A stretch of 64,000 bases of DNA from Bugula neritina (lineage: Eukaryota > Animalia > Bryozoa): the NCBI GenBank assembly GCA_964035545.1, contig OZ037766.1, forward strand, positions 2,790,001 through 2,854,000. The letters run 5' to 3'. Of the stretch, positions 18,084 through 59,500 are shown one piece after another. Within the stretch, counting starts at the first letter, position 1, and every line of letters starts with the position of its first letter. The notes under the pieces were generated by a model. It did no database searches. It saw only the letters and a list, made by a program, of their open reading frames with translations, and was not told where the DNA came from. Made by a program: the position numbers and the translations under genes.

Positions 18084-28662
<10,579 letters not shown>

Positions 28663-29963: not shown

Positions 29964-31352
29964 TTAGTCGCAAGTGACAGTGTTTGGTAGAGTGAATGGA
30001 TCTCCCCAGCTAGTAAGATCATAAAATTGCAAGTAAACATTGGCTCTCTTTATCATCTCTGCAGATATTTCAACACTGCAAGTCTTATCCCTGCCCATAT
30101 AAGTGCCCTTCTGACTGTCTTCAGCCAAAACATCTATTATCAACCCATACCGTTCATCAGTCAGTTCTAAGTTGATGTAACGAAACAGAGTTTGCAAATA
30201 TTTCATTTGATTGCTTAACCAGTGCTCATATTTAAACGCTGGCATAGCCCGAGAGCTGGGCACCCGTTCATTATACTCTCTAAAGTGAAAACATATCTCC
30301 GCCCAATTCAGGATAAAACCAAAAAACCGAAGCTCACAGGGTTTTGGAATATTTTGCTTCTTGAAAATATACTCCAGGTGGGTCTTGTCATCACAAGAAT
30401 TATACATGAACCCAAGAGGTCGAATACTGGGAAATATCCCAGATAGAATTTTGTTGGTAGCAATGTATGAAGTTACATCTGAAGGCAACTCTACTTTTGC
30501 CAGTAGGTTGTAGATTGAGGTGACTTGTTTTTCTACTTCTCTGTACATGAAGATGTTTTTGAACTTAGGAAACAACTTTGGCAAAAGCTTCATATCGGCT
30601 GTAGCAACAGTCGGTGAACCCTTGACAATTATAACACTGGCGTCCTTTTGGCTTGGCTTGAGTAACAGACATGTAGCTGCGTAAAATGTTCTCATATATT
30701 GCTCGGAAAACTCAGGTTTCTTGTTCCAATTCCCGAAATTCTTATACTTATAGACTTGATTAAGAGAGAAACAGCACTGCGGCTCAGATATGCAGGTCAC
30801 ATCTGGTAAGGCATTGAATGCTTGAGCTACAGCTGTGGAGCCACATCTTCCAGGATGGTGAATCCAGACCACTTTTGTGGTGGGTTCACCTATGACCTTT
30901 GATAACCGAATAAGAGAGCTGACTGGCATTATCAAAATATAGTTAGCAGCTTGATGCATTGCTTCAAACAAAAATGGCCACTTTCTCACATCTAACACGT
31001 TAACTTCAGGTGAAGGTACACAGAAGATAGCTTCTTTATCAGTTACTGTCATAAGTGTTATGTGTTTCTGTAGAGAATATTCTGGGTGTACAAACTTCAC
31101 ATGTGTTGATAAAAAGTGTCTCTGATAAAGAATAGTGAAAGGCGTAGGCTTAGATCTTGACCAGACTTTGAGCAGCTGTGCAGATGTTTCATATTCCTCC
31201 CCGACTTTGCATCTGTCCAAATGACTTTGAATACCAGCTATTCTCCAAGATATTAGTTGACAGATGCGTAGTAAACCGTAAAGTACAAGGTGAAATAAAT
31301 ATAGTACTACACTGATATAGGCCTGAAAGGTATAAGCATTCCAGGCACTCAT
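29964..31352 (-). CDS. Sulfotransferase-fold protein (PAPS-dependent sulfotransferase-like), intronless CDS, N-terminal hydrophobic anchor, 462 aa
   Basis: Uninterrupted ORF. 5'-PSB-like loop HHPGRCGST, 3'-PB-like IFMYRE..QVTS, and FKYEHW (YEDL-like). N-terminal hydrophobic segment AYISVVLYLFHLVLYGLL. Confidence 0.8.
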   Translation of the reverse strand: MSAWNAYTFQAYISVVLYLFHLVLYGLLRICQLISWRIAGIQSHLDRCKVGEEYETSAQLLKVWSRSKPTPFTILYQRHFLSTHVKFVHPEYSLQKHITLMTVTDKEAIFCVPSPEVNVLDVRKWPFLFEAMHQAANYILIMPVSSLIRLSKVIGEPTTKVVWIHHPGRCGSTAVAQAFNALPDVTCISEPQCCFSLNQVYKYKNFGNWNKKPEFSEQYMRTFYAATCLLLKPSQKDASVIIVKGSPTVATADMKLLPKLFPKFKNIFMYREVEKQVTSIYNLLAKVELPSDVTSYIATNKILSGIFPSIRPLGFMYNSCDDKTHLEYIFKKQNIPKPCELRFFGFILNWAEICFHFREYNERVPSSRAMPAFKYEHWLSNQMKYLQTLFRYINLELTDERYGLIIDVLAEDSQKGTYMGRDKTCSVEISAEMIKRANVYLQFYDLTSWGDPFTLPNTVTCD

Positions 31353-33721: not shown

Positions 33722-36700
33722 ATGGATCATCAACAACCTGCTCAGAACTCTCCTGTTAAAAGTTCTTCAGATGAAACCAAGGAGTCTGTTTTACCACCTT
33801 TAGCACCTGGTGATGGATCTAACATCGTTAGTAGTCCACCAGCCTCACCAGAGTATGTTCGTTCTCCGTCTGCAAAACCCACAGATAATGTAACAGCTCC
33901 GGAGCCAGCTGGTTCTGATTCTAAACTTGTACCACAACCACCACCAAAGTCTTCCCAAGAAACAAACAGTTTAGAACCTGATATTCTGGCACTCCTTCCT
34001 CCTCGACTGGCTCAAATGTCTGATGAAGAAAGAAAACGTTTATTTGTGGCAAAGTGTGACACTGAACAATACATTCAAAATGTCGAAGCAGTTGTGGATG
34101 TTTTAATGCACGAGTCTTTGTCACTGATAGAAGATTCTTCCAAGCTTATTCAGCTTTACAGGCAAGAATTGTAATTCTTTTGTTTTTCACCAGTAAATAA
34201 AAAAATAGTAATAAATTAAGTTTAGAAAGCTACTGGTGGATTTTGTCAATATATATTCTCTCTTGTAGTATGGTAGTAACTATAATAAGAAAATTAGTTC
34301 TATGTTTGGTGAATTTTAATTGTTTTACTTTGTTTTGTTTTATCTAGACTGATTTCTGCTGCAATTGTGATTAAGAAATGTGACATGGAAATGAAAGAAA
34401 AAGCTGTTCAAGCGTTAATAAAGAAAGGTTGGATGAAATTTCTCATGAATAGTTTTTTGCTGGTGATTGAGGAAGTGGAAAAACGTCAAGATGGTTGGGA
34501 AAATGGAAATAACAAAGTAACTATTTCTAACCTAACAATGGGGCTCATGGCTTTGACATTTATCATGAAGCGTTGTGCAGCTGAAACAGCAACTGAAATA
34601 TGCAACGCCATGGTTGCCTTTTTAATTCAAATCCTTGATCATCCGGCTCTGATAACTGCTGCAGCTGAAGGGGACCCAATAAATTTTAGGAAGAAGCTCC
34701 TTGCAGTTTTGGACGACATATCAAGGCTTGAAGTTCTCCGTAAGGAGATTTCTAGTAGTCAGTTGGAACAAATTGAAACTGTGTTGTGTAAATATATTGA
34801 TAAATTATCCTCTCTGAGCTCTGATTGCCAAAGAGCACTATACCTTCTTGGAGATGTTGATGTTGTGAACAGACTACCTCTTCAAAAGCTCTTAAATTTT
34901 GCTCCAACTACCGAAAGTTTAGAGTCAGATCTTGCTGATTGTCAAAAGACTGTAAAAAGGTTGAACTCAATCAGTATGGAGACTCATGTCTTGAAACCGT
35001 GGAGAGTTTATCTTGATTTCAGGTACTAGCAGGAGTTAGTGAAAGTATCAGCTAGTGCTCTGTTGTAATAATAAAAGATATTTTTGCAACACATGGTCAT
35101 TCAGTGATTTTCACAAATTGTTTTAAAAATTGCTGAAGAGTTTTTAGCTTGATTGACTATGAAGCATATTTAAAAATCTATAATTAACCACAATTATTGT
35201 GATTATTGCTCTATTTCAACAAATGCATTTAGTAAAAATAAGGCAAGATTTTTTTACAAATATTGTTTGAATTTTAATTATTTGTATTAATTTACTGTGG
35301 CTTATAACTTTATTTTCTGTCTATCTTTTATAGCTACATGATAACCGTGGTGAATCAGTCCAAGTTTTCGCAATGTTCTCCCACCGCATGTGGAGATTTT
35401 TACGCTGCTATAGTTAGAGATGGAGTGTGGTACAAGTTTGTGTCTGAGCTTTATCTTCATGTCATTGACTCACTCGAAAGGTTCAATGATGGGAGCCTCA
35501 AAATATCTTCAATTGCAATAGATGAAGCCTTAAAAAACCTCTACTACGCTCTCTCTACACTTCACAATGGCACTGATTATTGTAAAGATGTTCAAATCCT
35601 GCAGCTCACTGTTGACCATTTTTCCGACATGATTATTGAACAGTTGAAAAATCCTGTTCTTCTAAACATTTTGGCTAAAGATACTAGTGAGTCCAGCAAT
35701 AATAGTGAAAATTTACTTGTCGAGATTGGTGATGCGTTGCTAAGCATCATACACAACCTCACATTCTACTTCGAACCGTGTATTCCTACATTGAGAGAGA
35801 AGGGCATGATGTCAGTGGCAAGGAATGTACGAGAGCTTGCCTATACCTCAGACATCAAAACTTCTTGTCTTCTCATCATAGCCTATCTAATTGATGAGGG
35901 AGACAGCAAGGATGTGATGAAAATTACAGACGATGAATTATCTTTCCTAATTAAGGAAGTGAGGCTGTCAATGGAGCCTGAAAAGAAATCGGGATATCAT
36001 CCCGAAGAACTTATTGAAGGTTTAACGAGAATTGCCGGTATTGATCACAATAAACTAAAAGTGATTGAGCAGGGTGCTCTCCCTCTTCTGGTTCGGTCTC
36101 TCGATGCTGACAAGTATAACGCTGATCACCAGGCTGCCGCTGCTAAGGCCATCTGGAATCTGGCTTTTACTGATGAAAGTCGTCAAAAAATCATTGAGGA
36201 AGAAGGTTGCCTTGAAGGTAGAGTTTTGAACGTCACAAAGCATTTATTTAAATGTAATATTGTGTATTATTTGCCTTTCTATTTATTTATTTCCCACATA
36301 TAGCACTGCATAAACTGCAAAACTCTGAGAACCATAAAGTAAAAAATGCTGTTGGGGGAGCTTTGTGGCAAATTGAAGGAAAAAATAAGCATAAACAGAA
36401 CACTGTTAGTGAAGAGTTGACAAGAAATGGTAAATACTTACTTCTTAAGTTCCTTAATGCTTTCGTAATGACTCATTGATCAGTTCTGGCCTGTCACACA
36501 ATTAACCAATATTTTCATGGCTGACGGTCACAGTAAATTGCTGTCAACATTTCCATTTTCTAGACTCGAAACAGATAATGCTGAGTTATAATAAACTAGC
36601 TCGATCTGAAGTTCTCAAGATGAAAGAGAGGCTTGCTAATCTGGGTTACAAGGTGTGGATAGACGTAGAGCAGATCACTGCAGGTGAGTTGCATCAGTGC

Positions 36701-39430
36701 CTTTTCAAAATATCAAATGGAAAACAATCATTTAGAAAACAACTAATCACCAATAGACAACAAGAAAATAGACAATCAGCAAATGGACATTTGGAAAACG
36801 AGGAATATTTAACATGGACTAGTCTGGAAGAGTGCCCCAGTCCAAAATAGCTTTCAACAATAAATATATAAAGTCCGAATCAGTCAGGCCTATCATGAAA
36901 GTAGAATTAGTTGCCGAATAGTTTCAATTTAAGATGGCTCACAATTACAATAAGCCATTTTGACCTGACCAGATGCTGAATGCCCCCCTCCAAATTAGCT
37001 CATGTTGAATATGCTTTATTTTCCGAATGCCATTTTCCAAACGTCTACTTTCGAAGTGTCTGTTTCCAAGTTGTCTGTTGGTAATTTGTCCGTTTTCCAA
37101 ATAAGTGTTTTCCAATTGTCATTTTCAAAATGTGAGACAGCTTATTGAGATTAACTACTGTAGGCACAACATTTCTATGGGATTTTAGTAAGACATTGTG
37201 TAAGTGGCTGAGAAAAGTTTACAAATTTCAAGTAATTTGCATATTTTAATATCAAATTCTATTTGTTTACAATGTTCTTCAGTTTTTATCAGAATTTTAA
37301 TACCAAGTAGTTAATCAGTATAGTTGTATTTCGAGTTTTATTTTTGATCGTTTCTATGTTGCAGGTTTTTTGGCTGCTTTTTTTCTAAAAGCATTTATGC
37401 TAAAATCACTTATCTATTCAGGTGGTTCAACACTGGAAGCTATGAGCAAAGCCATTGAAGAATCAAGTTTGGTTTTAATCTTTTTCAGTGAAGCCTACAA
37501 AAACAGCACCAATTGCAGAGCAGGTAAAGCTAAAATCTAAGCTAGCTTCATCGTATATTTCCTAATGACTAGTTCAGCTGTTGAATGTAAGCTCAATATT
37601 ATAGTCGAGTGTTTTCCAGCGACCAGCCTTTGTCTGGGGGTTAGAGTCTTGGCTTAGCAAAAATGAAGTCATGAGTTCGATCTCCAGTAAAGGCGATTGG
37701 TGATGTTAGGAAGAGCATTCAGTCATATATGCTCCTGCGCCACACATAATTAGATAAATCCTTAGCAGGCTTGAAAAAAACCTTTTTCCTCTGGAGTTCT
37801 CATAAAGGCAGTGACTATAAACATGCGTGAGTTTTATGCATGAGTGTTGTTGGTTTTAGAGGCAGAGTATGTATTTGAACAGAGAAGGCCATTTCTCCCT
37901 GTACAAGTACAGCCCAAGTACGTACCTAACGGCTGGTTGGGAATCTTGCTAGGGACTAGATATCGTTACTGTCTGACTAAAGCTGACAGATACGATTTAG
38001 AAGTGTCATCACTACTACTTAAAGTACAGGAGCTCATTACTGGTGTCCAACAACCTAGTCTGGATGCAATAGGTACGTCTAGTAACAATCTAGTTTCTAG
38101 TAACAATCTTCGCCACTTAGTGCATAACTGTCAGCGTGTTTGAATTCAATTAAAATTAAGTCTAATCTGTAATAGATCCCTTTTTCCAATTGCTGTTTTC
38201 AAATACAAGGATTATGCATTTTATGTAGCTAGGTTAATACAACTAGTATGCTCTATTTTATTTAATTAGTGCTTCTTTTCAATGTTTTTATCTTATTGGA
38301 TGCATCACTGGAATAATTTTGGTTACTTACGGTGAAGAATATTTTATATATATATATATATATATATAAATATATCTTTACGAGCTAGTAATTTGATTAT
38401 AAATAGGTATACGAGAAACATTGTTATTTATTACTTTATTATGTAAAGTAATTACACTGATATTTCGGGTACCACTGTACCCATCTTCAGTGGTACCCGA
38501 AATATCAGTGTAATTACTTTACATAATAAAGTAATAAATAACAATGTTTCTCGTATACCTATTTATATATATATATATATGTCATGTTAGAGTATATTTT
38601 ATAATCTGAAACAAACAAAACTGTTCCAAATGTGTATACCCAGATGTCACTTAAGATACAGAACTCAACTGACACTTTTGTTTTCTTATATGTCCTGAAT
38701 GTGGTTTATATGTCGTATACATCTAGATTGGTTTAAGTTTCAAATGAAATTGGTGTAAAGGAAAGACAACTGTTATCTATCACTTACTGTTTTCTCAATC
38801 TCAAAGATTGTGTACGGCTGTATTCAAATTCTCAGTATTCCTGTTACTTGCAGACGGCCCTCTGATTGAGTCAACTGTAGAGCCACTGTTAGCCTCAGCT
38901 CCTTCAGAAAAGACAGTAAACTTGGAGTGCGTTAGTTGGACCACCCAACAAGTTGCTGAATGGCTGGGCACCTCAGATCTTTCGAATTTTGTGAAGTGGT
39001 AAGCTATGTATATGTAACGTGATTCAGTCATCATAAGAACAGCGAACTGGTGGACTATACCAACAGCAAGTTGCAGTAATTATTATCTACATTAATAATA
39101 ATAATTCTTGTTTTAGCTATTTTAATAATAATAATTTTCTTATTTATGCTGTTTTCTATATTATTATTCCCAAAATATCTCTGCTACATACATAGTTTTG
39201 CTATTTTTTATATTATACCCAAAATATTACTGCTACATATATTGTGTAGTTTTGTTATTTCTATAAGCTGTAGTGATAGGAAGATGAATGGAGAGATGTT
39301 GGCTGAGCTAGCATTGCTATCGCAGCACCACAAAGACACCTTCTACTCAATGATTGGTCAAATGCAAGGAGTTGATATCTTCGACTTTTTGAGATTTAGT
39401 TGTGCTGCCAAAAAACTTTGTCAGCAATAA
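33722..39430 (+). CDS. ARM-repeat / TIR / SAM-like protein, paralog A (~953 aa)
   Basis: Exons 33722-34161 (GC donor), 34348-35022, 35334-36217, 36304-36429, 36564-36683, 37422-37523, 37860-38072, 38854-38998, 39274-39430; total 2862 nt, in frame. ARM-type repeats (NKLKVIEQGALPLLV..AAKAIWNLAF..IIEEEGCLEAL). TIR: IMLSY..GYKVWIDVEQ..GSTLEAMSKAIEES..FSEAYKNSTNCRAEAEY..PNGWLGILLG. SAM-like: VSWTTQQVAEWL..KMNGEMLAEL. Upstream acceptor at 33692 implies a 5' exon. Confidence 0.88.
36700..37132. mobile_element. Degenerate MITE-like insertion with imperfect inverted arms in intron 5 of paralog A
   Basis: Absent from the matching paralog B intron. Left arm (ggaaaac..agacaa..ggacatttggaaaa) roughly mirrors the right arm (ttttccaaacgtc..ttgtct..gttttcc). 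Confidence 0.55.
37616..37841 (+). mobile_element. Probable tRNA-derived SINE in intron 6 of paralog A
   Basis: About 230 bp absent from the paralog B intron. Pol III B-box-like gagttcgatctc (37673-37684) preceded by an A-box-like segment; gagtgtt on both flanks may be a TSD. Confidence 0.55.
38345..38580. mobile_element. Palindromic insertion in (TA)n: perfect 80-bp inverted arms with a hammerhead-like core, probable Penelope-like element remnant
   Basis: Arms 38398-38477 and 38488-38567, 10-nt spacer. Minus strand reads CTGAAGA-T-GGGTAC-agtg-GTACCC-GAAA-TA-TC. Flanked by TA runs; absent in paralog B. Confidence 0.7.
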
Positions 39431-40907
39431 AATTCCCAGAATCCTTAGGGGATGTAAGAATACAGTAGTCTATGTATGATCCTCTACAGTAATCTTATAG
39501 ATATGTGATGTACCATGTGCCTTTATTTTCCTTGTCAATACTTAGTAACCGTGTTATAAATATATTTTGCATGCTGCTTTTTTCTGACATTTTTGTAGCA
39601 ATTATTGGGTAACTTTATTAAATTGCTTAGTTTTTATAGTGTTTTACAAAAGTTATTTTTATATAACTAATTGACTAAGTTATTTATGCTTTTTGTATTG
39701 TTTTCTATTTTTGGATAAACTTATATTTAGTTTCTCTAATACTTAATTATATTTTTCCAAATTTTTGAGCAATTTTACTTCAAATAATTTTTTTCTGTTG
39801 TTTTTGCTTTTACTTTTCTTCTACGTATCATAAAAATCAAAGCGTTTCAGTCTCACATTATTTCTAGCTACTGCCACGAATATCACAAGTTCGCCTTTAT
39901 ACAAATGTTTATTATATATTCGGGAATTTCCAACCATGTTTTTATTTTTAGAGCATATGAACCAAAAATACACAATCTAAGTAACAGACAAATAGAACAC
40001 AAGATGAGGTGCTTATAATAATTTTACTGAGTAATATTTACTAGCTTCCTCAATGGTAAGCTATGATTCCTTACAAACTTAGGACACTAGAATAATATTC
40101 AATTATATTATTTGTATTTCATTGAGCAAGTAAAACAGTTGCTTTGAGGGGCAAAGATAACTAATGATATTTTCAAGTGAGCATGCTACTTTTAAATTTA
40201 TGTACATGTATATAATAGTTATACTTTTCATGCACCATGAGCTGTGTTATCCATCGTAAATTTAAGCAATGTAAAATGCATCAGAAAAATATTATTGCTC
40301 AGCAGTATATTATCTATACTTCAAATTTTATAATAATGTTTATGTATTTGTGGTTCTAACTTATAAACTTCCACGTGATAATCTGCACATATGGACACGG
40401 TTTGGCAATATAATAGCATTTACATGCAGAGTTCAAAGCTATAGAAATCCTGAATTTAATTGAACATTGTATTAATTATGTATGTTGGACAACTAGTCAC
40501 CAAGAATTGCGATCAGAAGTTATCCTACCAGATCTTTGTTAATTCTGGGTATTCCATGCACGTCCTCGTTTATTTTTCCAGCTATCGACATTTCGATTTA
40601 AATGACATTGACATCACTCCGTAATAAACTATGGACCTACAGCATTCGCTTTAAATCTAAGTTGCACGTTAGCTTGTAAGTACCAGTATTTATAAGCGAG
40701 AGAAGCACGAGCACAGACTAATGTATTACCATGGTGAACCTTTGCCGGAAAATCATAACAGCGCTGAGTTTGTGGAGAAAATCTCTTTAAAATTATGTTT
40801 TTACTGCTGATGCAACGTGAGCTTTTTAAATTGTACACGTGGAACTATGGTTAAATTTTATTGCTGGTTTTTACAGCTTTGTAAATCTGCTAATAATCAA
40901 ACTGAAT

Positions 40908-43900
40908 ATGGATAAGGATAAGGATAAGGATAAGGAACAACCTGCTCAGAACTCTCCTGTCAAAAGTTCCTCAGATGAAACCAAGAATCTTGTTTTACCA
41001 CCTTTAGCACATGATGATGGATCGAGCATTGTTAGCAGTCCACCAGCTCCACCTGAGTATGTTCGTTCTTCGTCTCCAAAAGCCACAGATAATGTAACAG
41101 CTCCGGAGCCAACTGGTTCCGATTCTAAACTCGTACCACAACCACCACCAAAGTCTTCCCAAGAAACAAACAGTTTGGAACCTGATATTCTGGCACTTCT
41201 TCCTCCTCGACTGGCTCAAGTGTCTGATGAAGAAAGAAGACGCTTATTCGTGGCAAATTGTGACACTAAACAATACATTCAAAATGTCGAAACAATTGTT
41301 GCTGTTTTAATGCACGAATCTTTTTCACTGATAGACGATTCTTCCAAGCTTATTCAGCTTTACAAGTAAGAATTTAATTTTATGCTTGATGCAAGTAAGA
41401 CAATAAATAATAATTTACTTAGTAGGCTTGATGATTGATGACTTCTGCTAAGTTATGTTCTATTATTATTAGAATACAAATGTTGAACAATTAATTAATT
41501 CTAATTGTTTTAAAATTTCTCGTTTCAACTAGGCTGATTTCTGCTGCAATTGTGACTAAGAAGTGTGACATGGAATTGAAAGAAAAAGCTGTTCAAGCAT
41601 TAATAAAGAAAGGTTGGATGAAATTTCTCATAATGAATTTTTCACTGGTGATTGAAGAAGTGGAAAAATGTCAAAATGGCTGGGAAAGTGAGAACATCAA
41701 TGCAACAATTTCTAACTTAATTATAGGGCTCAATACCTTGACATTTACCATGAAGTGTTGTACAGCCGAAATTGCTATTGAAATATCTAAGGCTATGGTT
41801 GTCTTTGTAATTGAAATCCTGGATCACCCAGTTCTGTTAACTGCTGCAGTTGAAGGGGACCCAATAAGTTTTAGGAAGAAGCTCCTTGCAGTTTTGGACG
41901 ACATAGCAAGGCTTGACGTTCTCCGTAAGGAGATTTCTAGTAGTCAGTTGGAACAAATTGAAACTGTGTTGTGTAAATATATCGATAAATTATCCTCTCT
42001 GAGCTCTGATTGCCAAAGAGCACTATACCTTCTTGGAGATGTTGATGTTGTGAACAGACTACCTCTTCAAAAGCTCTTAAACTTTGCTCCAACGACTGAA
42101 AGTATAGAGTCAGATATTGCTGATTGTCAAAAGACAGTGAGAAAGTTGAACTCAATCAGTATGGAAACTCATGTCTGGAGGCCTTGGAGGGTTAGACTTG
42201 AATTCAGGTACTAGCAAAACTATACATGAAAGTTAGCAAAATTATCAGCTTGTTCTTTTTTGGATTCTAGCTTAATAAAAGATATTTTTGCATCTGACTT
42301 GGAAATTGCCATCACGTGGTTATTCAATGATTTCTTAAATTGTTATGAGAAATTACAAAAGGGTTTTTTACTTGATTGCGTATGACATTAGTTGTTCTTA
42401 TTGCTTTATTTCAACAAGTTCATCTACTAAAAATAAGTTAAGTTTCTGTTACAAATATTGTTTGAATTTTAATATATTGTACTAGTGTACTTTGAGTTCT
42501 AGCTTTATTTTCTATCTTTCTTGTATAGCTACATGATGGATGTGGTGACTCTGTCCAATTTCTCTCAGTGTTCTCCCACCGCGTGTGGAGATTTTTACGC
42601 TGCTATAGTTAGAGATGGAGTGTGGTACGAATTTGTGTCTGAGATTTATCTTCATGTCATTGACTCACTCAAAAGATTCAAAGATGGGAGCCTCAAAATA
42701 TCTTCATTTGCAATGGATTGCGCCATGATAAACCTCGTCAACAGTGTTGCTACACTCCAGAATGGCACTGATTATTGTAAAGATGCTCAAATCCTGCAGC
42801 TTACTGCTGACTATTTTTCGGACATGATTATTGAGCAGTTGAAAACTCCTGTTCTTCTAAACATTTTGGCTAAAGAAACTCGTGAGTCCAGCAATGATGG
42901 TGAAAATTTCCTTGTCGCGATTGGTGATGCATTGCTAAGCATCATACACAACCTTACATTTTACTTTGAACCGTGTATTCCTACATTGAGAGAGAAGGGA
43001 ATGATGTCAGTGGCAAGGAATGTGCGAGAACTTGCCCATGCCTCAAACACCAAGACCTCTTGTCTTCTCATCATAGCATATCTAATTGATGAGGGAGACA
43101 GCAAGGATGTGATGAAAATTACAGACGATGAATTATCTTTCCTAATTGAAGAATTGGGGGTGTCAATCGAACCCGATAGAATATCATATCATCCTGAAGA
43201 GGTCATTGAAGGTTTAACGAGAATTGCCGTTATTGATCACAATAAACTGAAAGTGATTGAGCAGGGTGCTCTCCCTCTTCTGGTTCGGTCTCTCAATGCT
43301 GACAAATATAACGCTGATCACCAGGCCGCCGCTGCTAAGGCCATCTGGAATCTGGCTTTTACTGATGAAAGTCGTCAAAAGATCATAGAGGAAGAAGGCT
43401 GCCTTGAAGGTAGAGTTTTGGACGTCACATAATGCGTTTATTTAAATGTGTATTGTGTATTGTTTGCCTTTTTATTTATTTGGATATTGTTTCCACATAT
43501 AGCATTGCGTAAGCTGCAAAACTCTGAGAACCTTAAAGTAAAGAACGCTGTTGCTGGTGCTTTGTGGCAAATTGAAGGGAAAAATAAGCATAAACAACAC
43601 GCTCCTAGTGAAGAGTTGACAAGAAATGGTAAATACTTACTTCTCAAGTTTCCTAATACTTTAGTTTTGACTCATTGGCTAGTTCTGGCTTTTTAATCAA
43701 CCTGAAAGCTTGAATAGACCCTTTTCAGAGGTCCCTTATATCTCCTTCACAGTAAAGATTTGTGGTCTTCCACAGGGAATAGGTTGAATGTTTGTATAAA
43801 GAGCAATTTCATTTAAAATTTAAAGTTTGGCTGCTACTTAGAATTCTAAATTATGCTATAGAATTGTCTTTTTAGGAGATAGATATTTTGGTATAAGCAC

Positions 43901-46280
43901 ACATATTAGCAGTTCAAAAAAAATTTTTTTATAGATAATTTTGACAAAAAATAATCTTGAAATCATTTATGTGGTTTTGGTTATTGAGCAAAGCTAAAGT
44001 GGGACTTTGTCAGTGCTCAGTAACCAAAACCACAAAAATGAGTTCAAGCCTATTTTGGGAGACCACAACTATTAATTGTAAGGGGGGACATTGGGACCTC
44101 TGAAAAGGGTCTATTGACCAATATTTCCATGGCTGATGGTCACAGTAAATTGCTGCCAACTTTTCCATTTTCTAGACTCGAAACAGATAATGCTGAGTTA
44201 TAATAAACTAGCTCGATCTGAAGTGCTCAAGATGAAAGAGAGGCTTGCTAATCTGGGTTACAAGGTGTGGATAGATGTAGAGCAGATCACTGCAGGTGAG
44301 TTCCTGCCTTAGCTAACTTGTAGTTTCGTGAAACAGCATATTAAGATTAACTACCATGAACAAGACTGTTGTATATGTGATTTTAGTAAGACATTGTGTA
44401 ACTGGCTAAGAAAAATTCACCAATTTTAGTAATTCACATATTTTATTGTCAAATCCTATTTGTTTACAACATTGTTTGATTGCTTTATAAAACTTAAAAA
44501 GTTCCATCTATTTAGGTGGTTCAACACTTGAAGCTATGAGTAAAGCCGTAGAAGAATCAAGTTTGGTTTTGATATTTTTCAGTGAAGCCTACAAAAACAG
44601 CAACAATTGCAGGGCGGGTAAGTTGAAATCTAAAGATAATTTCGTTGTTTTTCTAATGACTCTTTCAGCTGTTGAATTCGAACTAAATTTTTGTATAGTA
44701 GGTTTTTATTGGTTTTAGAGGCAGAGTATGTATTTGAACAGAGAAGGCCATTTCTCCCTGTACAAGTACAGCCCAAGTACGTGCCTAACGGCTGGTTGGG
44801 AATCTTGCTAGGGACTAGATATCGTTACTGTCTGACTAAAGCTGACAGATACGATTTAGAAGTGTCATCACTACTACTTAAAGTACAGGAGCTCATTACT
44901 GGTGTCCAGCAACCCAGTCTGGATGCAATAGGTACTTCTAGTAACAATCTAGTTTCTAGTAACATCTGTGCAGCTTCATCTCTTCTGTATGTTTGTAACT
45001 TATAAACGCATTGTTCATTATCAGCTAATGTAAGTCAATTTAACATAACTGTCAGTGTGTTTAAATTCAAAATTTCTGTTTGAAATGAAATTCTACTCTG
45101 TATTGGATCAGTGTACTCTCACCTATATAGTCAGTTTTTCAATTGCAATTGAAAAATCAGGCACTTTATATAACTGAAACAATACAACTATTATGAGCTT
45201 TTTGTTTTCAAGATCAGTTGTTTTTCAGGTGTATTCAAATGTCATGATGTTTCTGTTATTTTGAGTATATGTCATGTTGGAGTATATTTTATAGTCTGAA
45301 ACAAACAAAACTGTTACAAATGTGTATACCCAGATGTCACTTGAGATAGAGAACTCAACTGACACTTTTGTTTTCTTATATATCCTGAATGTGGTTTATA
45401 TGTCGTATACATTTAGATTGGTTTAAGTTTCAAATGAAATTGGTGTAAAGGAAAGACAACTGTTATCTATCACTTACTGTTTTCTCAATCTCAAAGTTTG
45501 TGTTCGGCTGTATTCAAATTCTTAGTATTCCTGCTACTTGCAGACGGCCCTCTGATTGAGTCAACTGTAGAGCCACTGCTAGCCTCAGCTCCTCTAGAAA
45601 AAGCAGTAAACTTGAAGTGTGTTAGTTGGACCACCCAACAAGTTGCTGAATGGCTCAGCACCTCAGATCTTTCCAACTTTGTGAAGTGGTAGGATATGTA
45701 TGTCTGGTATTATTCAATGAACAAGTAGTAGATAGCAAACACAGTGGCTCAGTTTTAGTCCCTGAAACTGAGCAACTGTGTTGCTAGCAGCTTTATTAGA
45801 ATCATACACTAATTAATTGTTGCTGTTCAACTAATTGTTTTCAACATATTTAGTGATGTTAAACACAAAGTATTCACGCATCACAACATAACACACTGAT
45901 CAGTAGTTTAAACAAGTTTGCCTATCAAAGCATGATCTGAAATTCTGGCTACTGTAGCTAACACAAAAAACAAGAACAGATGACAATAGTATTAAGAGAT
46001 ATGGTTACTCTTATTATTTGCATCATTACCAACTCTTGTTAATTAATATTATTTGATACACTATTACTCATAAAGTAATATTGTTATATGCATAGGCCTA
46101 ATTGTTATTTTTATAAACTATAGCGTTAGAGAGATGAATGGAGAGATGTTGGCTGAGCTAGCATTGCTATCGCAGCACCACAAAGACACCTTCTACTCAA
46201 TGATTGGTCAAATGCAAGGAGTTGATATTTCCGATTTTTTGAGATTCAGTTGTGCTGCCAAGAAACTTTGTCAGCAATAA
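40908..46280 (+). CDS. ARM-repeat / TIR / SAM-like protein, paralog B (~958 aa)
   Basis: Exons 40908-41365, 41533-42207, 42529-43409, 43503-43628, 44176-44295, 44516-44617, 44719-44931, 45544-45688, 46124-46280; total 2877 nt, in frame, all GT-AG. Same intron positions and phases as paralog A. Confidence 0.9.
43714..44114. mobile_element. MITE (non-autonomous DNA transposon) in intron 4 of paralog B
   Basis: TIRs atagacccttttcagaggtccc / gggacctctgaaaagggtctat. TSD is TGA or AT depending on the end chosen. Internal hairpin at 43956-44048. Empty site in paralog A at about 36500. Confidence 0.85.
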
Positions 46281-51082: not shown

Positions 51083-52466
51083 ATGAATTTCAGTACCTGG
51101 ATTGCTTATAAGAACTACCTGCTCTACAGCATCTATCTTTTACTTTATGGGTTACTACGGATCTGTTAACTGATATCTTGGAGAATAGCTGGTATTCAAA
51201 ATCATTTGAACAAATGCAAAGTCGGGGAGAAATATGAAACATCTGCACAGCTGCTCAAAGTTTGGTCAAGATCTAAGCCTACATTTTTCACTATACTTTT
51301 TCAAAGACACTTTTTATCAACACATGTGAAGTTTGTACATCCAGATTATTCTCTACAGAAACACATAACACTTATGACAGTAACTGATAAAGAAGCTATC
51401 TTCTGTGTACCTTCATCAAAAGTAGACATTCTCAATGTCAAAAAATGGCCATTTCTTTTTCATGCTCAACACGAGACAGCTGAATACATTCTCGTAATGC
51501 CCATCCAATCACTCATCAAATTAGCTTCTGTCCTTGGAGATCCAACAGGAAAGGTTATCTGGGTTCACCACACTGGAAGATGCATGTGGATCTACAGCCA
51601 TGGCTCAAGCTTGCAATGCTTTACCAGATGTGCTGACTATTTCAGAGCCTCTCAACATCTTCTCTCTCGATCAATCTTTCAAGTATAGGCATTTGAGGAG
51701 TGATAGCTTAGATTGGGAGCCTACAGAAGAATATCTCAGCATTCATCAGAGCATCGTGAGAGTCATGTTATCAAAGCCTTACCTGAAATCAGCTAAAATA
51801 ATTGTTGTGAAAGCAGCTCCTGCGAATTCAATGGTTGATTTAAACTCAATTGTTGAACTCTTTTCCAAGTTTATCAATGTATTCATGTACAGAGAAATGA
51901 GAGAGCAGGTTACCTCATTGTACAAAACAGTTTCAGGTTTTGATATCCAAAGAGGCTTGACTTCTTTTATTGCTTCATCTACGATATTGTCTCGGTTCTT
52001 TCCAAATGTGAAACCTCACGCTACATTACAAAACTGCTGCAATGACAAAAAACATGTGGAATGGCTGCTTGATAAAAGCAGTGTTCACAATCATACAGAA
52101 TTTATTGCTTTTGTTATCAGTTGGTGTGAGACTTGTTCGCACTACATGAAGCTTGGTGAAAGTTTAACCGAACCAAAAGTGCCTGCCTTTAAATATGAAC
52201 ACTGGCAATCGAATCCAGACAAATATCTTGAAACATTTTTCAAGTTAGTAGATCTAGAATTGACCGACGAGAGACTTCAGATTGTGAAAGATGTCTTGAA
52301 TGAAGACAGTCAGAAGAACTCCATGTTCTCAAGAGAGAAGGTAAAGCAGAGAGGGGTTGAGATTCCTAAAGATATGATTCATGTAGCTAATTCATACTCC
52401 AAATTTTATCACCTGCCAGAATGGGGAGCGTCCTGTATTTTACCTAATACAGCAACATCTCCTTAA
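51083..52466 (+). pseudogene. Sulfotransferase-like paralog 2, disrupted
   Basis: ATG 51083. In-frame TAA at 51167-51169 (CAA/Gln in the intact paralog). A 4-bp insertion at about 51582 (AGATGCATGTGGA) frameshifts the GRCGST motif. Otherwise collinear with 29964-31352. Confidence 0.85.
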
Positions 52467-54616: not shown

Positions 54617-55987
54617 TAAGGAGATGTTACTGTATACAGGACGCTCCCCATTCTGGCAGGTGATAAAATTTGGAGTATGAATTAGCTACATGAATCATAC
54701 CTTTAGGAATCTCAACCCCTCTCTGCTTTACCTTCTCTCTTGAGAACATGGAGTTCTTCTGACTGTCTTCATTCAAAACATCTTTCACAATCTGAAGTCT
54801 CTTGTTGGTCAATTCTAGATCTACTAACTTGAAAAATGTTTCAAGATATTTGTCTGGATTTGATTGCCAGTGTTCATATTTGAAGGCAGGCACTTTTGGT
54901 TCGGTTGAACCTTCGCAGAGCTTCATGTAGTGTGAACAAACCTCACAATAGCTGATAACGTAAGCAATAAATTCTGTATAATTATGGGCCTTGCTCTTAC
55001 CAAGCATCCATTCAACGTGCTTTTTGTCATTACAGCTGTTTTGTACTATTGCGTGAGGTTTCACATTTGGAAAAAGATCTGAGACAATGTTATAGACGAG
55101 GCAATAAAAGCAGTCAAGTCTCGTTGAATATTTAAACTTGCAAATGCTTTGTAAGATGAGGTAACCTGCTCTCTCATTTCTCTGTACATGAATACATTGA
55201 TAAACTTGGGAAAGATTTCAACAATCAAGTCTAAATCAACCATTGAATTCTTAGGAGCTGCTTTCACAACAATTATTTCAGCTGATTTCAGGTAAGGCTT
55301 TGATAACATGACTCTCACGGTGCTCTGATAAATGCTGAGATATTCTTCTGTAGGCTCCCAATCTAAGCTACCGTTTCTCAAACAGTTATATTTGAAAGAT
55401 TGATCAAGAGATAATAAGTTGAGAGACTCTGAAATAGTCAGCACATCTGGTAAAGCATTACAAGCCTGAGCCATGGCTGTAGATCCACATCTTCCAGGGT
55501 GATGAACCCAGATAACCTTTCCTGTCGGATCTCCAAGGACAGAAGCTAATTTGATGAGTGATTGGATGGGCATTACGAGAATGTATTCAGCTGTCTGGTA
55601 TTGAGCAAGAAAGAGAAATGGCCACTTTCTCACATCTAATACGTTAACTTCAGGTGGAGGTACACAGAAGATAGCTTCTTTATCAGTTACTGTCATAAGT
55701 GTTATGTGTTTCTGTAAAGAATACTCTGGATGTACAAACTTCACATGAGTTGATAAAAAGTGTCTTTGATAAAGAATAGTGAAAGGCGTAGGCTTAGATC
55801 TTGACCAAACTTTGAGCAGCTGTGCAGATGTTTCATATTTCTCCCCGACTTTGCATTTGTTCAAATGATTTTGAATACCAGCTATTCTCCAAGATATCAG
55901 TTAACAGATCCGTAGTAACCCATAAAGTAAAAGATGGATGCTGTAGAGCAGATAATTCTTATAAGTAATCCAGGTTCTTGAAACCAT
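54617..55987 (-). pseudogene. Sulfotransferase-like paralog 3, disrupted, convergent with paralog 2
   Basis: ATG 55987. Same TAA at 55903-55901. +2 frameshift in a T-run at about 55071-55075. 10-bp deletion near the C-terminus relative to paralog 2. Confidence 0.85.
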
Positions 55988-56244: not shown

Positions 56245-56510
56245 AACTTATAGTTTCTACCAAAGCATATTTAAAAAGTACGTAAATGCAAGCCTGGGAA
56301 CTTATAGGAGTCATGAGCCTTGTAATATATATGCTCTCATTTAATGCTCAGCAATGACATTAAATGATTGAGCACTCTCACCATGGTCACAAACTCAAGC
56401 TGCTAGCATTTTGCAATGCTCGTGACTCCTAGGTGACCCCTAGAGTCACTTGAGCACTCTGGCTTGAGTTTACACACCTTTTAAATATGCTTTAGTAAAA
56501 CTATAAGTTT
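56245..56510. mobile_element. Degenerate MITE with ~50-bp imperfect TIRs
   Basis: aacttatagtttctaccaaagcatatttaaaaag..caagcc versus ggcttg..cttttaaatatgctttagtaaaactataagtt; second inner inverted pair aggagtcatgagc / gctcgtgactcct. Confidence 0.7.
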
Positions 56511-56545
56511 ATACTATTGCAAAGGTGTGGGCCATGGTACTCTGT

Positions 56546-56592
56546 TCTGTGCTGATGAGGGGACAAATCCCGAAACAGCTGCTGTCCACAGA
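56546..56592 (+). ncRNA. Type I hammerhead ribozyme
   Basis: Stem I TCTGTG/CACAGA; core CTGATGA (56552-56558); stem II GGG(G)A-caaa-TCCC; GAAA (56572-56575); stem III ACAGC-t-GCTGT; cleavage triplet GTC (56584-56586). Confidence 0.88.
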
Positions 56593-59500
56593 TTAAGATA
56601 TATATATATATATATATATTCTTAAATGTGGTTTCATAGGGGGCTGCTCATAGGGGGCTTATATGCATTTAGTATATTTCGATACCATAGGGGGCCTATA
56701 AACAGAGCCCCCTCTGTTATCAGAATATATCATATTTTTTTTCTTTGAAATTGTCTTCTCATTTTTACCTTTTGAGTAATAAAAGCTATATTACATTTGT
56801 ACTATGCAAAGTATAGAAACTCAATTGGTTTTGTTCTACTTTGTCTGCTATAATTAATTCTCCAACAATTTCAGTTAAAAAAAATTATTTTTCAACTTCT
56901 ATTCACACTATGCCATTAATCTCTGTAAGGAACTAATATAGCCATGCATTCAAAATAAAAAAATTACACTTCTATTTCCTATGTTATGTATTTCCTTTTT
57001 AAAATCGAATAAGGATTTTCATGTCTAATAATTCGAAGTGCACCCTGTATCATCCTCATTACATTTGTTGATGTTTTGCTTATTCTTATATTTTGTTCAG
57101 GTAATGAAAGTTGTATATATATATATTTTTTTTTATATAACAGGAAAAGTTCAATTAAATTGAACCAAGTTTATATAATTTTAAACTGTAAAAACAAGTA
57201 CTTTGAAAAAGAAATTGCACGTCATTCAATAAGCAAGTGAAGTAAAATATTGTAATAGCAAAAATAGAATAGCAGTTAGTTGACAAAATACAGATATAAT
57301 TAATTAATTAAAAGTTGCCTCAAATTATTATAAGCCTATATTGTATACTTAAAGAATGAATGAAACATAATGTATATTTTATTTTAGAAATTACTCAATT
57401 TGAATGCAGCCAGTTTATACTGTAATATCTAATATCTATAGTATTTTCCTGTATTAAAAAATATGTGTGTTAAGTTCATTTAGCTACCATGCATATACCT
57501 ACTATAATTCGGACAAAGCAAGATAAAACTAATTTCTAAACTAGCTATATGTTCTAAAGTCTTTTAATAAAAAACAATTGGATAGATAGCACCACTATAT
57601 AGGTATTACTAAAAAAACGGCCAGGTATGCACTTCTATTTACCAGATGCTAAACGATTTGCTTCAAAGGCTTATTTTTTAAGTTTTACTAGCTATTCCTT
57701 TCATTAAATCAACCGTATAGGTACAGTATTTTGCAGATTTCTTAAAAGTCTGCCTCAGTGATTCTTTGAACAGTTATATAGATGGCAATTTGAGGGCACT
57801 GTTTGTAATCAATCATTAAAGAACACGCAGAACACCATTGCTTTAAACTAATCTTAAGAATATTAGCACATTTTCTGCACTCCATCTTCATGATGCATCA
57901 TATGAGAACAAAATGTCCTACTAATATTTTTGTCATTGCTAATATTATTTGAATTACTAATGCACAATAGGCTGATAATGTTTTAATATTTATTTCAAAA
58001 TAATTATAGTATTCTATTTGAATTTACATAACAAAGAGACTTGTAATATATGATAGGATTAAACCAATTAAAATATATTTTTCACAATCATTTATATCTG
58101 AAAATGTACTTTGAACTGCGATTCTTTGCTATAGTGCACACAAAACAGTCGGCTAGTACACTTTCATATGCTCTAAAGTCTATAGAGATTAACTCAACGC
58201 TTCAGTAAAATATATTGAGTTAAAGCTGAATGTAAGGCTACTAATTATATGCTCTTTCTTCTCAAACCCATATCTGAGTTCTTTTTTTAAATGCTTTACG
58301 GAGCACAAATAAGAGCAACCCCTAACTATATCTTTCACAGTTGCTAATATATAAAATAGTGCTTTTTAAAAAACCTGAAGCTATATGTGTACTAAAACAA
58401 AATTTGAAAACCATGTTATCTAGCCTTTTATAAGCTATTGAAACTTTTTGTTGGCTAGAAATGCAGCAGTTACACTACAAATTACTCTTTAATTGCAATA
58501 GCTTCAAAAGAAATATATTAGCAAGCTTCTGAATGTGCCTTGATTTTTTTTCAATCTTTAGCAGTAACTTTTATAGGTTTAATGTTAACAATTAGTGGTA
58601 TAATATACAAGCTTTTTCAAAACTGCTCCCAACTCTTAGCAATTGGGCATTTTGTTTGCATGAGCAGACGTTTCAGAACCCGTCTCTGTTACTGCTTTTA
58701 CGTACTTTTTATTTAATCTTGTACTGGTAAACTACATTTTTTTACTGGCCTTACCTGGCATAAATATATTGACAATTCAAATATTGGCACTCAACAATTT
58801 GTAAGCTAGGATAGCAGTTTATGCACAATCGCACTATATATGCAACTGGTTTATCTCTCTTTTTGTCCTAATGCTAGAGAGACAAATTAACATAATATTT
58901 ATGACAAGCACCAGATTTTTTCTTATTTTTTTTGTTTGGGTATCAGTCTACTACTATAAGCATTACGACATAGCCTTGTAAACTAAGACAAGTAAACAAC
59001 TTTCCTTCTACAATGTGTAAGTCATCTTCCATTGAAATACAGAATGTTTAATGCATGCTTTATAAACATCAGCAAGACTTTCCCCGGGAAAGTTTATAGT
59101 AATATATTATTAAATTTTTCTTTCAATTATTTTCAGAAACTATTGTGTGTAACACAATGCTACTTTAAATCTTAATTAAACAACTTGGCTATATAATTAC
59201 AGGTTATTAACTAAAGCTTGCCAATTTTCACAAAAGCTAAACTTCAGAATAAGCAATTTTGGCTTGCTTTGTTGATAGCCTACCGTGATAGAGAGCAATC
59301 CAGTAAGTTGAGTATTGGGTAAATGTTTCAATTTGTTTTAAGTTTCATAAAAAGCTCTTTCAGTAGCTCTTTTCACAAATTGATAGAAGACAATAATGCA
59401 GAATATTGGGGTAGAGATACAAACTGAACAACAATGTATGGTGCGACCATTAAACATGTTTTTACTTTGAGAATATTTCAAAATTGATTTATCTTGTAAG

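What the first reader, a model, noticed from the sequence alone, without database searches (positions are those of the whole stretch)
33722..46280. Tandem pair of ARM-TIR-SAM proteins: a rearranged SARM1-like, putative NAD+-cleaving immune receptor system
Seen: both genes splice into intact ~955-aa proteins with a Pro/Ser-rich N-tail, a long helical/ARM region, a TIR domain and a C-terminal SAM-like domain. The alphaC motif S-x-N-C-R-A-E-A-E-Y keeps the glutamate at the position used for catalysis by enzymatic TIRs. Established: SARM1 is ARM-SAM-SAM-TIR, and enzymatic TIRs (SARM1, plant TNLs, bacterial Thoeris) need that Glu plus oligomerisation. ARM+TIR proteins are known from invertebrate genome surveys, so the architecture may not be new, but I know of no biochemical characterisation. 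Inference: ARM is the sensor or autoinhibitor, SAM the oligomeriser and TIR the NADase or signal generator, i.e. a receptor family parallel to NLRs and SARM1.
Basis: partly seen in the sequence, partly recalled or inferred. Interest (0 to 1): 0.85.

Follow-up and report, generated by a model that had tools for sequence, protein, structure and literature searches.

The report
Tandem ARM-TIR-SAM genes in a bryozoan
Two neighbouring, intact bryozoan genes encode proteins with an armadillo-repeat region, a TIR domain and a SAM domain; they are recent duplicates within a widespread but functionally uncharacterised animal family, not a rearranged SARM1, and whether they cleave NAD+ is untested.

Summary
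Window 33722-39430 and 40908-46280 (+) carry two nine-exon genes of 953 and 958 aa. Each has a Pro/Ser-rich tail, about 560 aa of alpha-solenoid/ARM, a TIR domain and a divergent C-terminal SAM domain. Every splice site is canonical (one GC-AG), no exon has a stop, and dN/dS between the copies is 0.31. Transcript-like contigs from four studies join the ARM, TIR and SAM exons at the junctions I predicted. The motif N-C-R-A-E-A-E-Y is real. Its first Glu (Glu783/788; the codon is split by intron 6) sits in the family's invariant column. A family profile aligns that column with the catalytic Glu of Cat1, RPS4 and TIR-1/SARM1.

This is the known "ARM-TIR" family, found from corals to lamprey and gar, and most retrieved members end in the same SAM-like domain. 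Neither its TIR nor its ARM is specifically SARM1-like. A 2026 preprint catalogues Bugula ARM-TIR proteins in the TIR cluster whose tested gar member is a close TIR relative of the window proteins. All four isolated TIRs tested from that cluster were inactive, while an oyster TIR from another cluster made cADPR. The pair is a recent tandem duplication, one of at least three pairs in this genome (other notes of this scan flagged two of them). It is a new member of a known kind.

The parts
33722..34161 (+). Gene 1 exon 1: start codon, Pro/Ser-rich low-complexity tail (about 105 aa), then the first helices. The donor is GC (GC-AG intron 1).
   Evidence: joint 34161|34348 seen in one transcript-like contig
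34348..35022 (+). Gene 1 exon 2: 224-aa helical region with no Pfam hit. Probably the N-terminal continuation of the alpha-solenoid. Specific to the chromosome-C2 subfamily.
   Evidence: homologous exon in the C2 paralogs; language-model look-alikes are HEAT/TPR/ARM-type solenoid pieces (weak)
35334..36217 (+). Gene 1 exon 3: armadillo-repeat solenoid (294 aa).
   Evidence: Pfam Arm 6.6e-6; AF2 pLDDT 91.9, pTM 0.90, all-helical; Foldseek top hits are designed ARM repeat proteins and APC-ARM
36304..36429 (+). Gene 1 exon 4: last ARM repeat and linker to the TIR.
   Evidence: joints 36217|36304 and 36429|36564 in transcript contigs
36564..36683 (+). Gene 1 exon 5: TIR beta-A to beta-B. Reads I-M-L-S-Y-N-K-L where the family has S-Y-Q-W-D.
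   Evidence: Pfam TIR_2 6e-4; alignments
37422..37523 (+). Gene 1 exon 6: TIR BB loop, alpha-B, beta-C and the start of alpha-C. Ends ...N-C-R-A plus the first base (G) of the Glu783 codon.
   Evidence: Pfam TIR_2 3.6e-5
37860..38072 (+). Gene 1 exon 7: begins with AG, completing Glu783 (the catalytic-position Glu). Then A-E-Y-V-F, beta-D, the G-W-L-G motif, alpha-E and a linker.
   Evidence: joints 37523|37860 and 38072|38854 in contigs
38854..38998 (+). Gene 1 exon 8: linker and N-terminal half of the SAM-like domain (W-T-T-Q-Q-V-A-E-W-L).
39274..39430 (+). Gene 1 exon 9: C-terminal half of the SAM-like domain and the TAA stop. An alternative acceptor 6 nt upstream (39268) is also seen.
37618..37740 (.). 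SINE-like dispersed repeat inserted in gene 1 intron 6 and absent from gene 2. Not part of the coding unit.
   Evidence: very high contig depth; 771 first-look candidates in the genome at 81-88% identity; no tRNA or Rfam match
40908..41365 (+). Gene 2 exon 1. Has an extra (D-K)n insert after the start codon; the donor is GT.
41533..42207 (+). Gene 2 exon 2: helical region, 82% aa identity to gene 1, with a divergent patch at aa 31-105.
42529..43409 (+). Gene 2 exon 3: ARM repeats, with a one-codon deletion relative to gene 1.
43503..43628 (+). Gene 2 exon 4: last ARM repeat and linker.
44176..44295 (+). Gene 2 exon 5: TIR, 100% aa identical to gene 1.
44516..44617 (+). Gene 2 exon 6: TIR. Ends N-C-R-A plus the G of the Glu788 codon.
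44719..44931 (+). Gene 2 exon 7: TIR C-terminal half and linker, 100% aa identical to gene 1, dS 0.06.
45544..45688 (+). Gene 2 exon 8: N-terminal half of the SAM-like domain.
46124..46280 (+). Gene 2 exon 9: C-terminal half of the SAM-like domain and the stop.

Best explanation
Shown: these are two recently duplicated, intact paralogues of a bryozoan-expanded subfamily of the pan-metazoan ARM-TIR-SAM family (the 'ARM-TIR' proteins of invertebrate immune-gene surveys). The N-terminus shows no hydrophobic signal-like or membrane-like segment by eye, so a cytosolic location is likely (not tested with a predictor). Each protein has a long ARM/alpha-solenoid, a TIR_2-type TIR domain that keeps the family's invariant Glu at the position used for catalysis by NAD+-processing TIRs, and one divergent C-terminal SAM domain. 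Inferred: the ARM solenoid binds a partner or ligand and may hold the TIR inactive. The SAM domain self-associates and brings TIR domains together. The assembled TIRs then either process NAD+ (cADPR-type signal or NAD+ depletion; I put this at roughly 50%) or act as a scaffold in innate-immune or cell-death signalling. The tandem arrangement reflects gene-family turnover. The TIR exons are kept nearly identical, probably by gene conversion plus purifying selection, while parts of the ARM/N-terminal region diverge.
For: Intact nine-exon genes with omega 0.31. Spliced contigs from four studies join ARM exon 3 through SAM exon 9; one 1665-nt contig spans most of that stretch. Homologues with Arm + TIR_2 + SAM_1/2/3 Pfam hits occur in annelids, molluscs, hemichordates and more. 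Named relatives run from corals and Nematostella to lamprey and gar. The closest named protein is from the bryozoan Watersipora subatra. The C-terminal domain is found at the extreme C-terminus of 147 of 260 retrieved relatives. Its profile hits only SAM domains in the PDB: liprin-beta1 1e-11, ETV6 1e-8, SMS1 2e-6, SARM1 SAM 4e-6. The TIR profile's best PDB hits are enzymatic TIRs, and the family Glu aligns to the Glu of Cat1 C-W-D-E, RPS4 C-V-R-E and TIR-1 H-K-E. That Glu is invariant in 31 of 31 aligned TIR-SAM regions. It is the same column as gar W5N735 E317, the residue Hurieva et al. call catalytic. Their Table S2 lists several Bugula neritina ARM(TPR-clan)-TIR proteins with a Glu whose C-alpha lies 0.6-1.0 A from ThsB E85. 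An oyster TIR with the same motif pattern, from another TIR cluster, made cADPR in a Glu-dependent way. The window's exon 3 folds as an ARM solenoid. The TIR-SAM part of a same-genome paralogue folds as TIR plus a helical bundle at pLDDT 95-98. In the tree, gene 1 and gene 2 are sisters, and all six genomic copies share the exon structure. TIR exons 5 and 7 are 100% aa identical with dS 0.06-0.08, against dS of about 0.2 or more (0.16-0.48) in the other exons.
Against: There is no functional data for any bryozoan member. All four isolated TIR domains tested from the TIR cluster represented by A0A0B7AZE4_1 (Chlamydomonas, amphioxus, gar, Phallusia) are blank in the 'Active' column of Table S4. 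I infer the window proteins belong to that cluster from their alignment to the gar member; I did not test it by clustering. The window's subfamily has lost the family's near-invariant Trp in the beta-A/alpha-A loop (S-Y-Q-W-D becomes S-Y-N-K-L). In SARM1 and plant TIRs that loop lines the NAD+ pocket (PMC7075850). A Glu at this position also occurs in TIRs with no detected activity, such as TLR2. The transcript contigs are 93-97% identical and carry a mix of gene 1, gene 2 and unique letters. They therefore prove the splice pattern in a close relative or strain, not expression of these exact copies. An immune role is inferred only from the domain types.
Confidence: 0.6

Rival explanations
1. 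Non-enzymatic adaptor or scaffold. The TIR domain only mediates TIR-TIR contacts, for example downstream of Toll-like receptors. The ARM and SAM domains recruit partners, and the conserved Glu is structural.
For: Four of four isolated TIRs tested from the relevant TIR cluster showed no product or NAD+ loss. The near-invariant pocket-loop Trp is lost in the window's subfamily. MyD88 TIR is also a good structural match, TM 0.73. A Glu at this position is frequent in inactive TLR1/2/6/10-type TIRs.
Against: The Glu is invariant in 31 of 31 family members spanning cnidarians to vertebrates. The best sequence-profile matches in the PDB are enzymatic TIRs. TIRs from other clusters with the same motif pattern are active (oyster, herring, coelacanth). 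Isolated TIR domains often need oligomerisation, which the constructs lacking SAM could not supply (my own knowledge of SARM1 and plant TIRs).
Confidence: 0.33
2. A SARM1 paralogue made by domain shuffling (ARM-SAM-SAM-TIR turned into ARM-TIR-SAM), sharing SARM1's NMN/NAD+-sensing ARM and octameric SAM ring.
For: The same three domain types are present. SARM1's SAM and TIR both appear among the weaker profile hits.
Against: There is one SAM, not two, and it is closer to the liprin and ETV6 SAMs than to SARM1's. The TIR lacks the SARM1 box motifs and is no closer to SARM1 than to bacterial or plant TIRs. SARM1's ARM is absent from the top 50 fold matches. SARM1 TIRs form their own cluster or group. 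ARM-TIR proteins coexist with SARM in Aplysia and oyster surveys. Green-algal ARM-TIR proteins sit in the same TIR cluster, which suggests an old, separate origin.
Confidence: 0.04
3. A functional two-gene unit (sensor plus helper, as in paired plant NLRs), in which the tandem arrangement itself is required.
For: All six copies found in the genome lie in three head-to-tail pairs. The chromosome-C1 pair may predate the split from Watersipora, with weak support of 87/76.
Against: Gene 1 and gene 2 are sisters at 85% aa identity with identical architecture. The upstream and downstream members of different pairs do not group by position. The effector-type domains are identical rather than specialised.
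Confidence: 0.03

Closest known systems
ARM-TIR proteins of invertebrate immune-gene surveys (oyster, Aplysia, sea urchin, amphioxus); the TIR cluster represented by A0A0B7AZE4_1 in Hurieva et al. 2026 (bioRxiv 10.64898/2026.04.20.719644)
   Same: N-terminal ARM repeats. TIR_2-type TIR with the G-S-T-L-E-A-M, C-R-x-E-A-E-Y and G-W-L-G motifs. A C-terminal SAM-like domain. No signal peptide evident by eye. That cluster already lists several Bugula neritina ARM-TIR proteins with a Glu at the catalytic position.
   Different: The window genes belong to a divergent bryozoan subclade (long branch). They carry about 370 extra N-terminal residues (953 aa against a typical 600-700). The near-invariant Trp of S-Y-Q-W-D is replaced.
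SARM1 / dSarm / TIR-1
   Same: ARM, SAM and TIR domain types in one protein. A Glu at the position of E642 by profile alignment. A plausible shared logic of oligomerisation-dependent TIR activity.
   Different: Domain order ARM-TIR-SAM with a single SAM. The TIR lacks SARM1-specific motifs and sits in another TIR cluster. The ARM is not specifically similar. SARM1 is typically single-copy, whereas this family is multi-copy and tandemly duplicated.
Enzymatic TIRs of bacteria and plants (Cat1, ThsB, RPS4/RPP1, SPARTA TIR-APAZ)
   Same: These are the best sequence-profile and structural neighbours. The catalytic-position Glu is conserved.
   Different: Different partner domains. No activity has been demonstrated for the TIR cluster that the window's TIR appears to belong to.

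Membership tests
ARM-TIR(-SAM) family of Metazoa | N-terminal armadillo-repeat solenoid | tested here: met
   Pfam Arm 6.6e-6 on exon 3; AF2 pTM 0.90 with ARM-repeat fold matches
ARM-TIR(-SAM) family of Metazoa | TIR_2-type TIR with the family motifs (G-S-T-L-E-A-M, C-R-x-E-A-E-Y, G-W-L-G) following the ARM | tested here: met
   The exon 5-7 pieces align column for column with 34 family TIRs. Transcripts join the exons.
ARM-TIR(-SAM) family of Metazoa | C-terminal SAM-like domain (W-x4-V-x2-W-L ... D-G-x-L-L ... P-E-F-F-Y) | tested here: met
   Exons 8 and 9 align to it. The profile hits only SAM domains in the PDB. Sixteen of 32 sequences in the alignment hit Pfam SAM_1/SAM_2. The window copy is divergent: no Pfam hit exon by exon.
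ARM-TIR(-SAM) family of Metazoa | Near-invariant S-Y-Q-W-D after beta-A | tested here: not met
   Gene 1 and gene 2 read S-Y-N-K-L. The two other C2 paralogues read S-Y-N-H-x. The C1 pair keeps S-Y-Q-W-D. This is subfamily divergence, not exclusion from the family.
SARM1 orthologues | Domain order ARM - SAM - SAM - TIR with tandem SAMs | tested here: not met
   The order is ARM - TIR - single SAM.
SARM1 orthologues | SARM1-type TIR (box 1 D-V-F-I-S-Y, BB loop E-(R/K)-L-E-A-G, W-V-H-K-E; group 24 of PMC7075850) | tested here: not met
   The window has I-M-L-S-Y-N-K, V-E-Q-I-T-A-G-G and N-C-R-A-E. phmmer of an annelid family member's TIR (P0020) against the PDB found nothing, SARM1 included.
SARM1 orthologues | Catalytic Glu equivalent to E642 | tested here: met
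   The family profile aligns its Glu to the H-K-E of TIR-1/SARM1. This is by sequence profile, not by superposition of the window protein itself.
NAD+-processing (enzymatic) TIR domains | Glu on alpha-C pointing into the pocket | tested here: inconclusive
   The position is met by alignment, and by published structural alignment for Bugula family members. The orientation in the window proteins could not be modelled, because the TIR is split over three exons and no reference exists for the joined sequence.
NAD+-processing (enzymatic) TIR domains | Measured NAD+ cleavage or cyclisation that depends on the Glu | not testable with these tools
   Published assay: four of four TIRs from the relevant cluster were inactive when isolated; an oyster TIR from another cluster was active.
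NAD+-processing (enzymatic) TIR domains | A means of oligomerisation | tested here: inconclusive
   A SAM domain is present. Self-association was not tested.

The most novel reading that the evidence does not exclude
The chromosome-C2 genes are a bryozoan-specific receptor-like subfamily. In this reading a lengthened, diversifying ARM solenoid is the recognition surface (local pN/pS 1.4-2.1 in exon 3 patches, on small counts). A TIR-SAM effector kept uniform by gene conversion polymerises through SAM and makes an NAD+-derived signal. The remodelled pocket loop (S-Y-N-K-L) changes the product or substrate relative to the canonical family. That would be an NLR-like evolutionary mode built on ARM-TIR-SAM.
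Probability: 0.15. Interest if true: 0.6.

Novelty: new member of a known kind. Interest (0 to 1): 0.3.

Why it matters
The ARM-TIR-SAM family is widespread in animals, including lamprey and gar, and often multi-copy, yet no member has a known biological role. If SAM-driven assembly switches on its TIR, it would be a second animal NAD+-signalling TIR system alongside SARM1. It could also explain why isolated TIRs of this cluster looked inactive in the 2026 screen. For this window specifically the gain is modest. It adds well-supported gene models, shows that the C-terminal SAM is a family-wide feature, and documents a bryozoan expansion in tandem pairs with a changed pocket loop.

Tried and rejected
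1. I tried to obtain the window's own full-length proteins as database entries so they could be folded and scanned whole. Three homologous-protein searches and the representative search returned only single-exon ORF fragments of bryozoan paralogues (P0001-P0010), a Watersipora protein (P0018) and a transcript-derived paralogue of the same genome (P0258). All searches were exon by exon, by reference. As a result the window's own TIR (three exons, with the Glu codon split) could not be folded or superposed on SARM1. In scripts I read only the junction codons, with 12 nt on each side.

2. phmmer of a family TIR against the PDB found nothing. Only the profile reached solved TIRs.

3. Pfam on exons 1, 2, 7, 8 and 9 alone gave no meaningful hits.

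4. I considered a paired sensor/helper reading and rejected it from the tree.

5. I considered that the RNA-like contigs came from gene 2. Rejected: 22 of 40 variant letters match gene 2 and the rest match neither copy.

6. I considered that the high-depth block in intron 6 was a tRNA or a known RNA. There was no ARAGORN or Rfam match. It is a dispersed repeat.

Full report
WHAT IS THERE

The region lies in AT-rich, intron-bearing animal DNA. Earlier notes of this scan call the genome a bryozoan. The closest named protein I found is from the bryozoan Watersipora subatra.

A self-comparison shows that 33.7-39.8 kb and 40.9-46.7 kb are tandem copies. They are 82-98% identical, introns included.

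I built the gene 1 model from the reading frames and splice signals and transferred it to gene 2. Both models have nine exons. Intron phases are identical in the two genes, and all acceptors are AG. All donors are GT except gene 1 intron 1, which is GC. There are no internal stops. The products are 953 aa and 958 aa.

Between the copies dN is 0.064, dS is 0.207 and omega is 0.31, so both are under purifying selection.

RNA EVIDENCE

No run is on record as RNA. Even so, contigs from four runs of four studies lie on the exons only and skip the introns at my predicted junctions. The joints are 34161|34348, 36217|36304, 36429|36564, 36683|37422, 37523|37860, 38072|38854 and 38998|39274. A minor acceptor at 39268 is also used.

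One 1665-nt contig runs from ARM exon 3 through the TIR exons into SAM exon 9. Spliced joints can only come from cDNA.

There is a caveat. The contigs are 93-97% identical to the window. Of 40 variant letters, 22 equal gene 2 and the rest equal neither copy. The contigs come from another strain or sibling species. They show the splice pattern, not expression of these exact copies.

DOMAINS

- N-terminal tail. The first 105 aa are 34% Pro plus Ser.
- Exon 2 (224 aa). It has no Pfam or BLAST match outside the bryozoan paralogues. It looks like generic alpha-solenoid to a language-model search (weak evidence).
- Exon 3. It hits Pfam Arm at 6.6e-6. It folds with pLDDT 91.9 and pTM 0.90 as an all-helical repeat. 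The best PDB matches are designed armadillo-repeat proteins and APC-ARM. SARM1's ARM is not in the top 50.
- Exons 5-7. They carry a TIR_2-type TIR domain.
- Exons 8-9. They align to the C-terminal domain of the family. A profile of that domain hits only SAM domains among solved structures: liprin-beta1 at 1e-11, ETV6 at 1e-8, SMS1 at 2e-6 and SARM1 SAM at 4e-6. Half of the aligned sequences hit Pfam SAM_1/2/3.
- TIR-SAM model. The TIR-SAM part of P0258, a transcript-derived paralogue from the same genome, folds as a TIR plus a helical bundle at pLDDT 95-98, joined by a disordered linker.

THE GLUTAMATE

The motif is N-C-R-A-E-A-E-Y in both genes. The first Glu (783 in gene 1, 788 in gene 2) is encoded by a codon split G|AG by phase-1 intron 6. 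The other bryozoan paralogues have an exon break at the same point of the motif.

In a 37-row TIR alignment this Glu falls in a nearly invariant column. It is invariant in 31 of 31 TIR-SAM regions. It is the same column as E317 of gar W5N735 (my P0255), the residue that Hurieva et al. list as catalytic.

A profile of the family aligns that Glu with the catalytic-motif Glu of Cat1, RPS4 and C. elegans TIR-1, which is the SARM1 E642 position.

I could not superpose the window's own TIR, because the joined sequence has no reference. That step was left out.

WHAT FAMILY IT IS

A whole-library search with the ARM exon returned 341 relatives. Full-length hits have Arm + TIR_2 (+ SAM) Pfam architectures. 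Named relatives come from annelids, nemerteans, molluscs, brachiopods, hemichordates, echinoderms, amphioxus, tunicates, corals, Nematostella, lamprey and gar. Almost all are annotated 'uncharacterized' or 'TIR domain-containing'. The SAM-like domain sits at the extreme C-terminus of 147 of 260 retrieved proteins.

The category 'ARM-TIR' is standard in invertebrate immune-gene surveys, where it is listed apart from SARM (oyster PMC4346834; Aplysia PMC9334734).

Hurieva et al. (bioRxiv 10.64898/2026.04.20.719644) place such TIRs in a cluster represented by A0A0B7AZE4_1. That cluster already contains several Bugula neritina ARM(TPR-clan)-TIR proteins, one of them with a SAM. Each has a Glu whose C-alpha lies 0.6-1.0 A from ThsB E85 in structural alignments. 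The cluster also includes green-algal members. SARM1 is in a different cluster and a different group in PMC7075850. I infer that the window's TIR belongs to this cluster from its close alignment to the gar member; I did not test this by clustering.

The TIR model's structural neighbours are Hydra TRR-2 (TM 0.80), MyD88 (0.73), SARM1 (0.68), SPARTA and plant TIRs. So it is a TIR with mostly enzymatic neighbours and no special link to SARM1.

BIOCHEMISTRY IN THE LITERATURE

In Table S4 of that preprint, four isolated TIR domains of this cluster have an empty 'Active' field: Chlamydomonas, Branchiostoma lanceolatum, gar and Phallusia. An oyster TIR from another cluster (A0A8W8J0Z4) shows the same motif pattern by eye and made cADPR. 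TIRs from other clusters that also show this pattern (herring, coelacanth) were active too. I did not verify that the oyster protein carries ARM repeats.

The constructs were TIR domains alone, without the SAM domain.

WITHIN THE GENOME

The ARM exon finds six copies, in three head-to-tail pairs:
- this window;
- a pair 650-660 kb upstream on the same chromosome (C2);
- a pair on another chromosome (C1).

Two of these pairs were flagged by other first-stage notes. All six share the exon order ARM-TIR-SAM.

In a maximum-likelihood tree, gene 1 and gene 2 are sisters (100/99). Next comes the upstream member of the other C2 pair, then its downstream member. This C2 clade sits on a long branch together with exon fragments from other assemblies. 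The C1 pair groups with Watersipora P0018 and with P0258, nearer to the pan-metazoan sequences.

The C2 clade has an extra N-terminal region. It also replaces the family's near-invariant Trp (S-Y-Q-W-D) with S-Y-N-K-L or S-Y-N-H-x. In SARM1 and plant TIRs that loop lines the NAD+ pocket.

Between gene 1 and gene 2, TIR exons 5 and 7 are 100% identical in protein with dS of 0.06-0.08. dS ranges from 0.16 to 0.48 in the other exons, and identity stays high into the flanking introns. This points to gene conversion.

Differences in exons 2 and 3 are patchy. Two short exon 3 stretches have pN/pS above 1, on very small counts. That is suggestive only.

VERDICT

The architecture and the Glu are real, but this is a new member of an already catalogued, widespread ARM-TIR(-SAM) family. 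It is not a rearranged SARM1, and the pair is not a two-component system.

The most likely mechanism is ARM-mediated recognition or autoinhibition, SAM-mediated assembly, and TIR signalling that may be enzymatic. Published evidence for catalysis is mixed and indirect, and this subfamily has a changed pocket loop. Interest is moderate to low for this window. The family as a whole remains a worthwhile biochemical target.

Noticed in passing
window 37540-37760 (core about 37618-37740), gene 1 intron 6: A SINE-like dispersed repeat of about 120 nt. The genome search gave 771 first-look candidates at 81-88% identity, and contig depth in the RNA-like runs was extremely high. It is absent from the same intron of gene 2. 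No tRNA or Rfam match.
   Followed up: partly
window 29964-31352 (-), 51206-52466 (+), 54627-55864 (-): Three copies of a single-exon ORF family of about 460 aa flank the TIR gene pair. The first is intact (462 aa). The other two are each split into two ORFs, probably by frameshifts. They are 63% identical to the first copy and have no Pfam match. They contain an H-P-G-R-C-G-S-T-A motif that might be a nucleotide- or PAPS-binding loop. Function unknown.
   Followed up: partly
window 2178-5631 (+): Three tandem ORFs, the first a Pfam C-type lectin domain (Lectin_C 2.1e-12). They form a small lectin cluster about 28 kb upstream of the TIR genes.
   Followed up: partly
window 21724-24519 (+): Exons of a glycoside hydrolase family 31 (alpha-glucosidase-like) gene.
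   Followed up: partly
window 56546-56620: Another first-stage note calls this a type I hammerhead ribozyme. Rfam found nothing there, either at gathering threshold over the whole window or at E<=1 over 56400-56800. The only hits were two chance-level miRNA matches in the (TA)n run.
   Followed up: partly
window 39268 / 39274: Alternative 3' splice sites 6 nt apart at the start of exon 9 are both seen in transcript-like contigs. They add or remove two residues at the start of the second half of the SAM domain.
   Followed up: no
window 1521-1990 (-): Long ORFs made of a simple S-P-S-L/S-H-P-L repeat in a GC-skewed block at the window's start. Probably a low-complexity repeat rather than a gene.
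   Followed up: no
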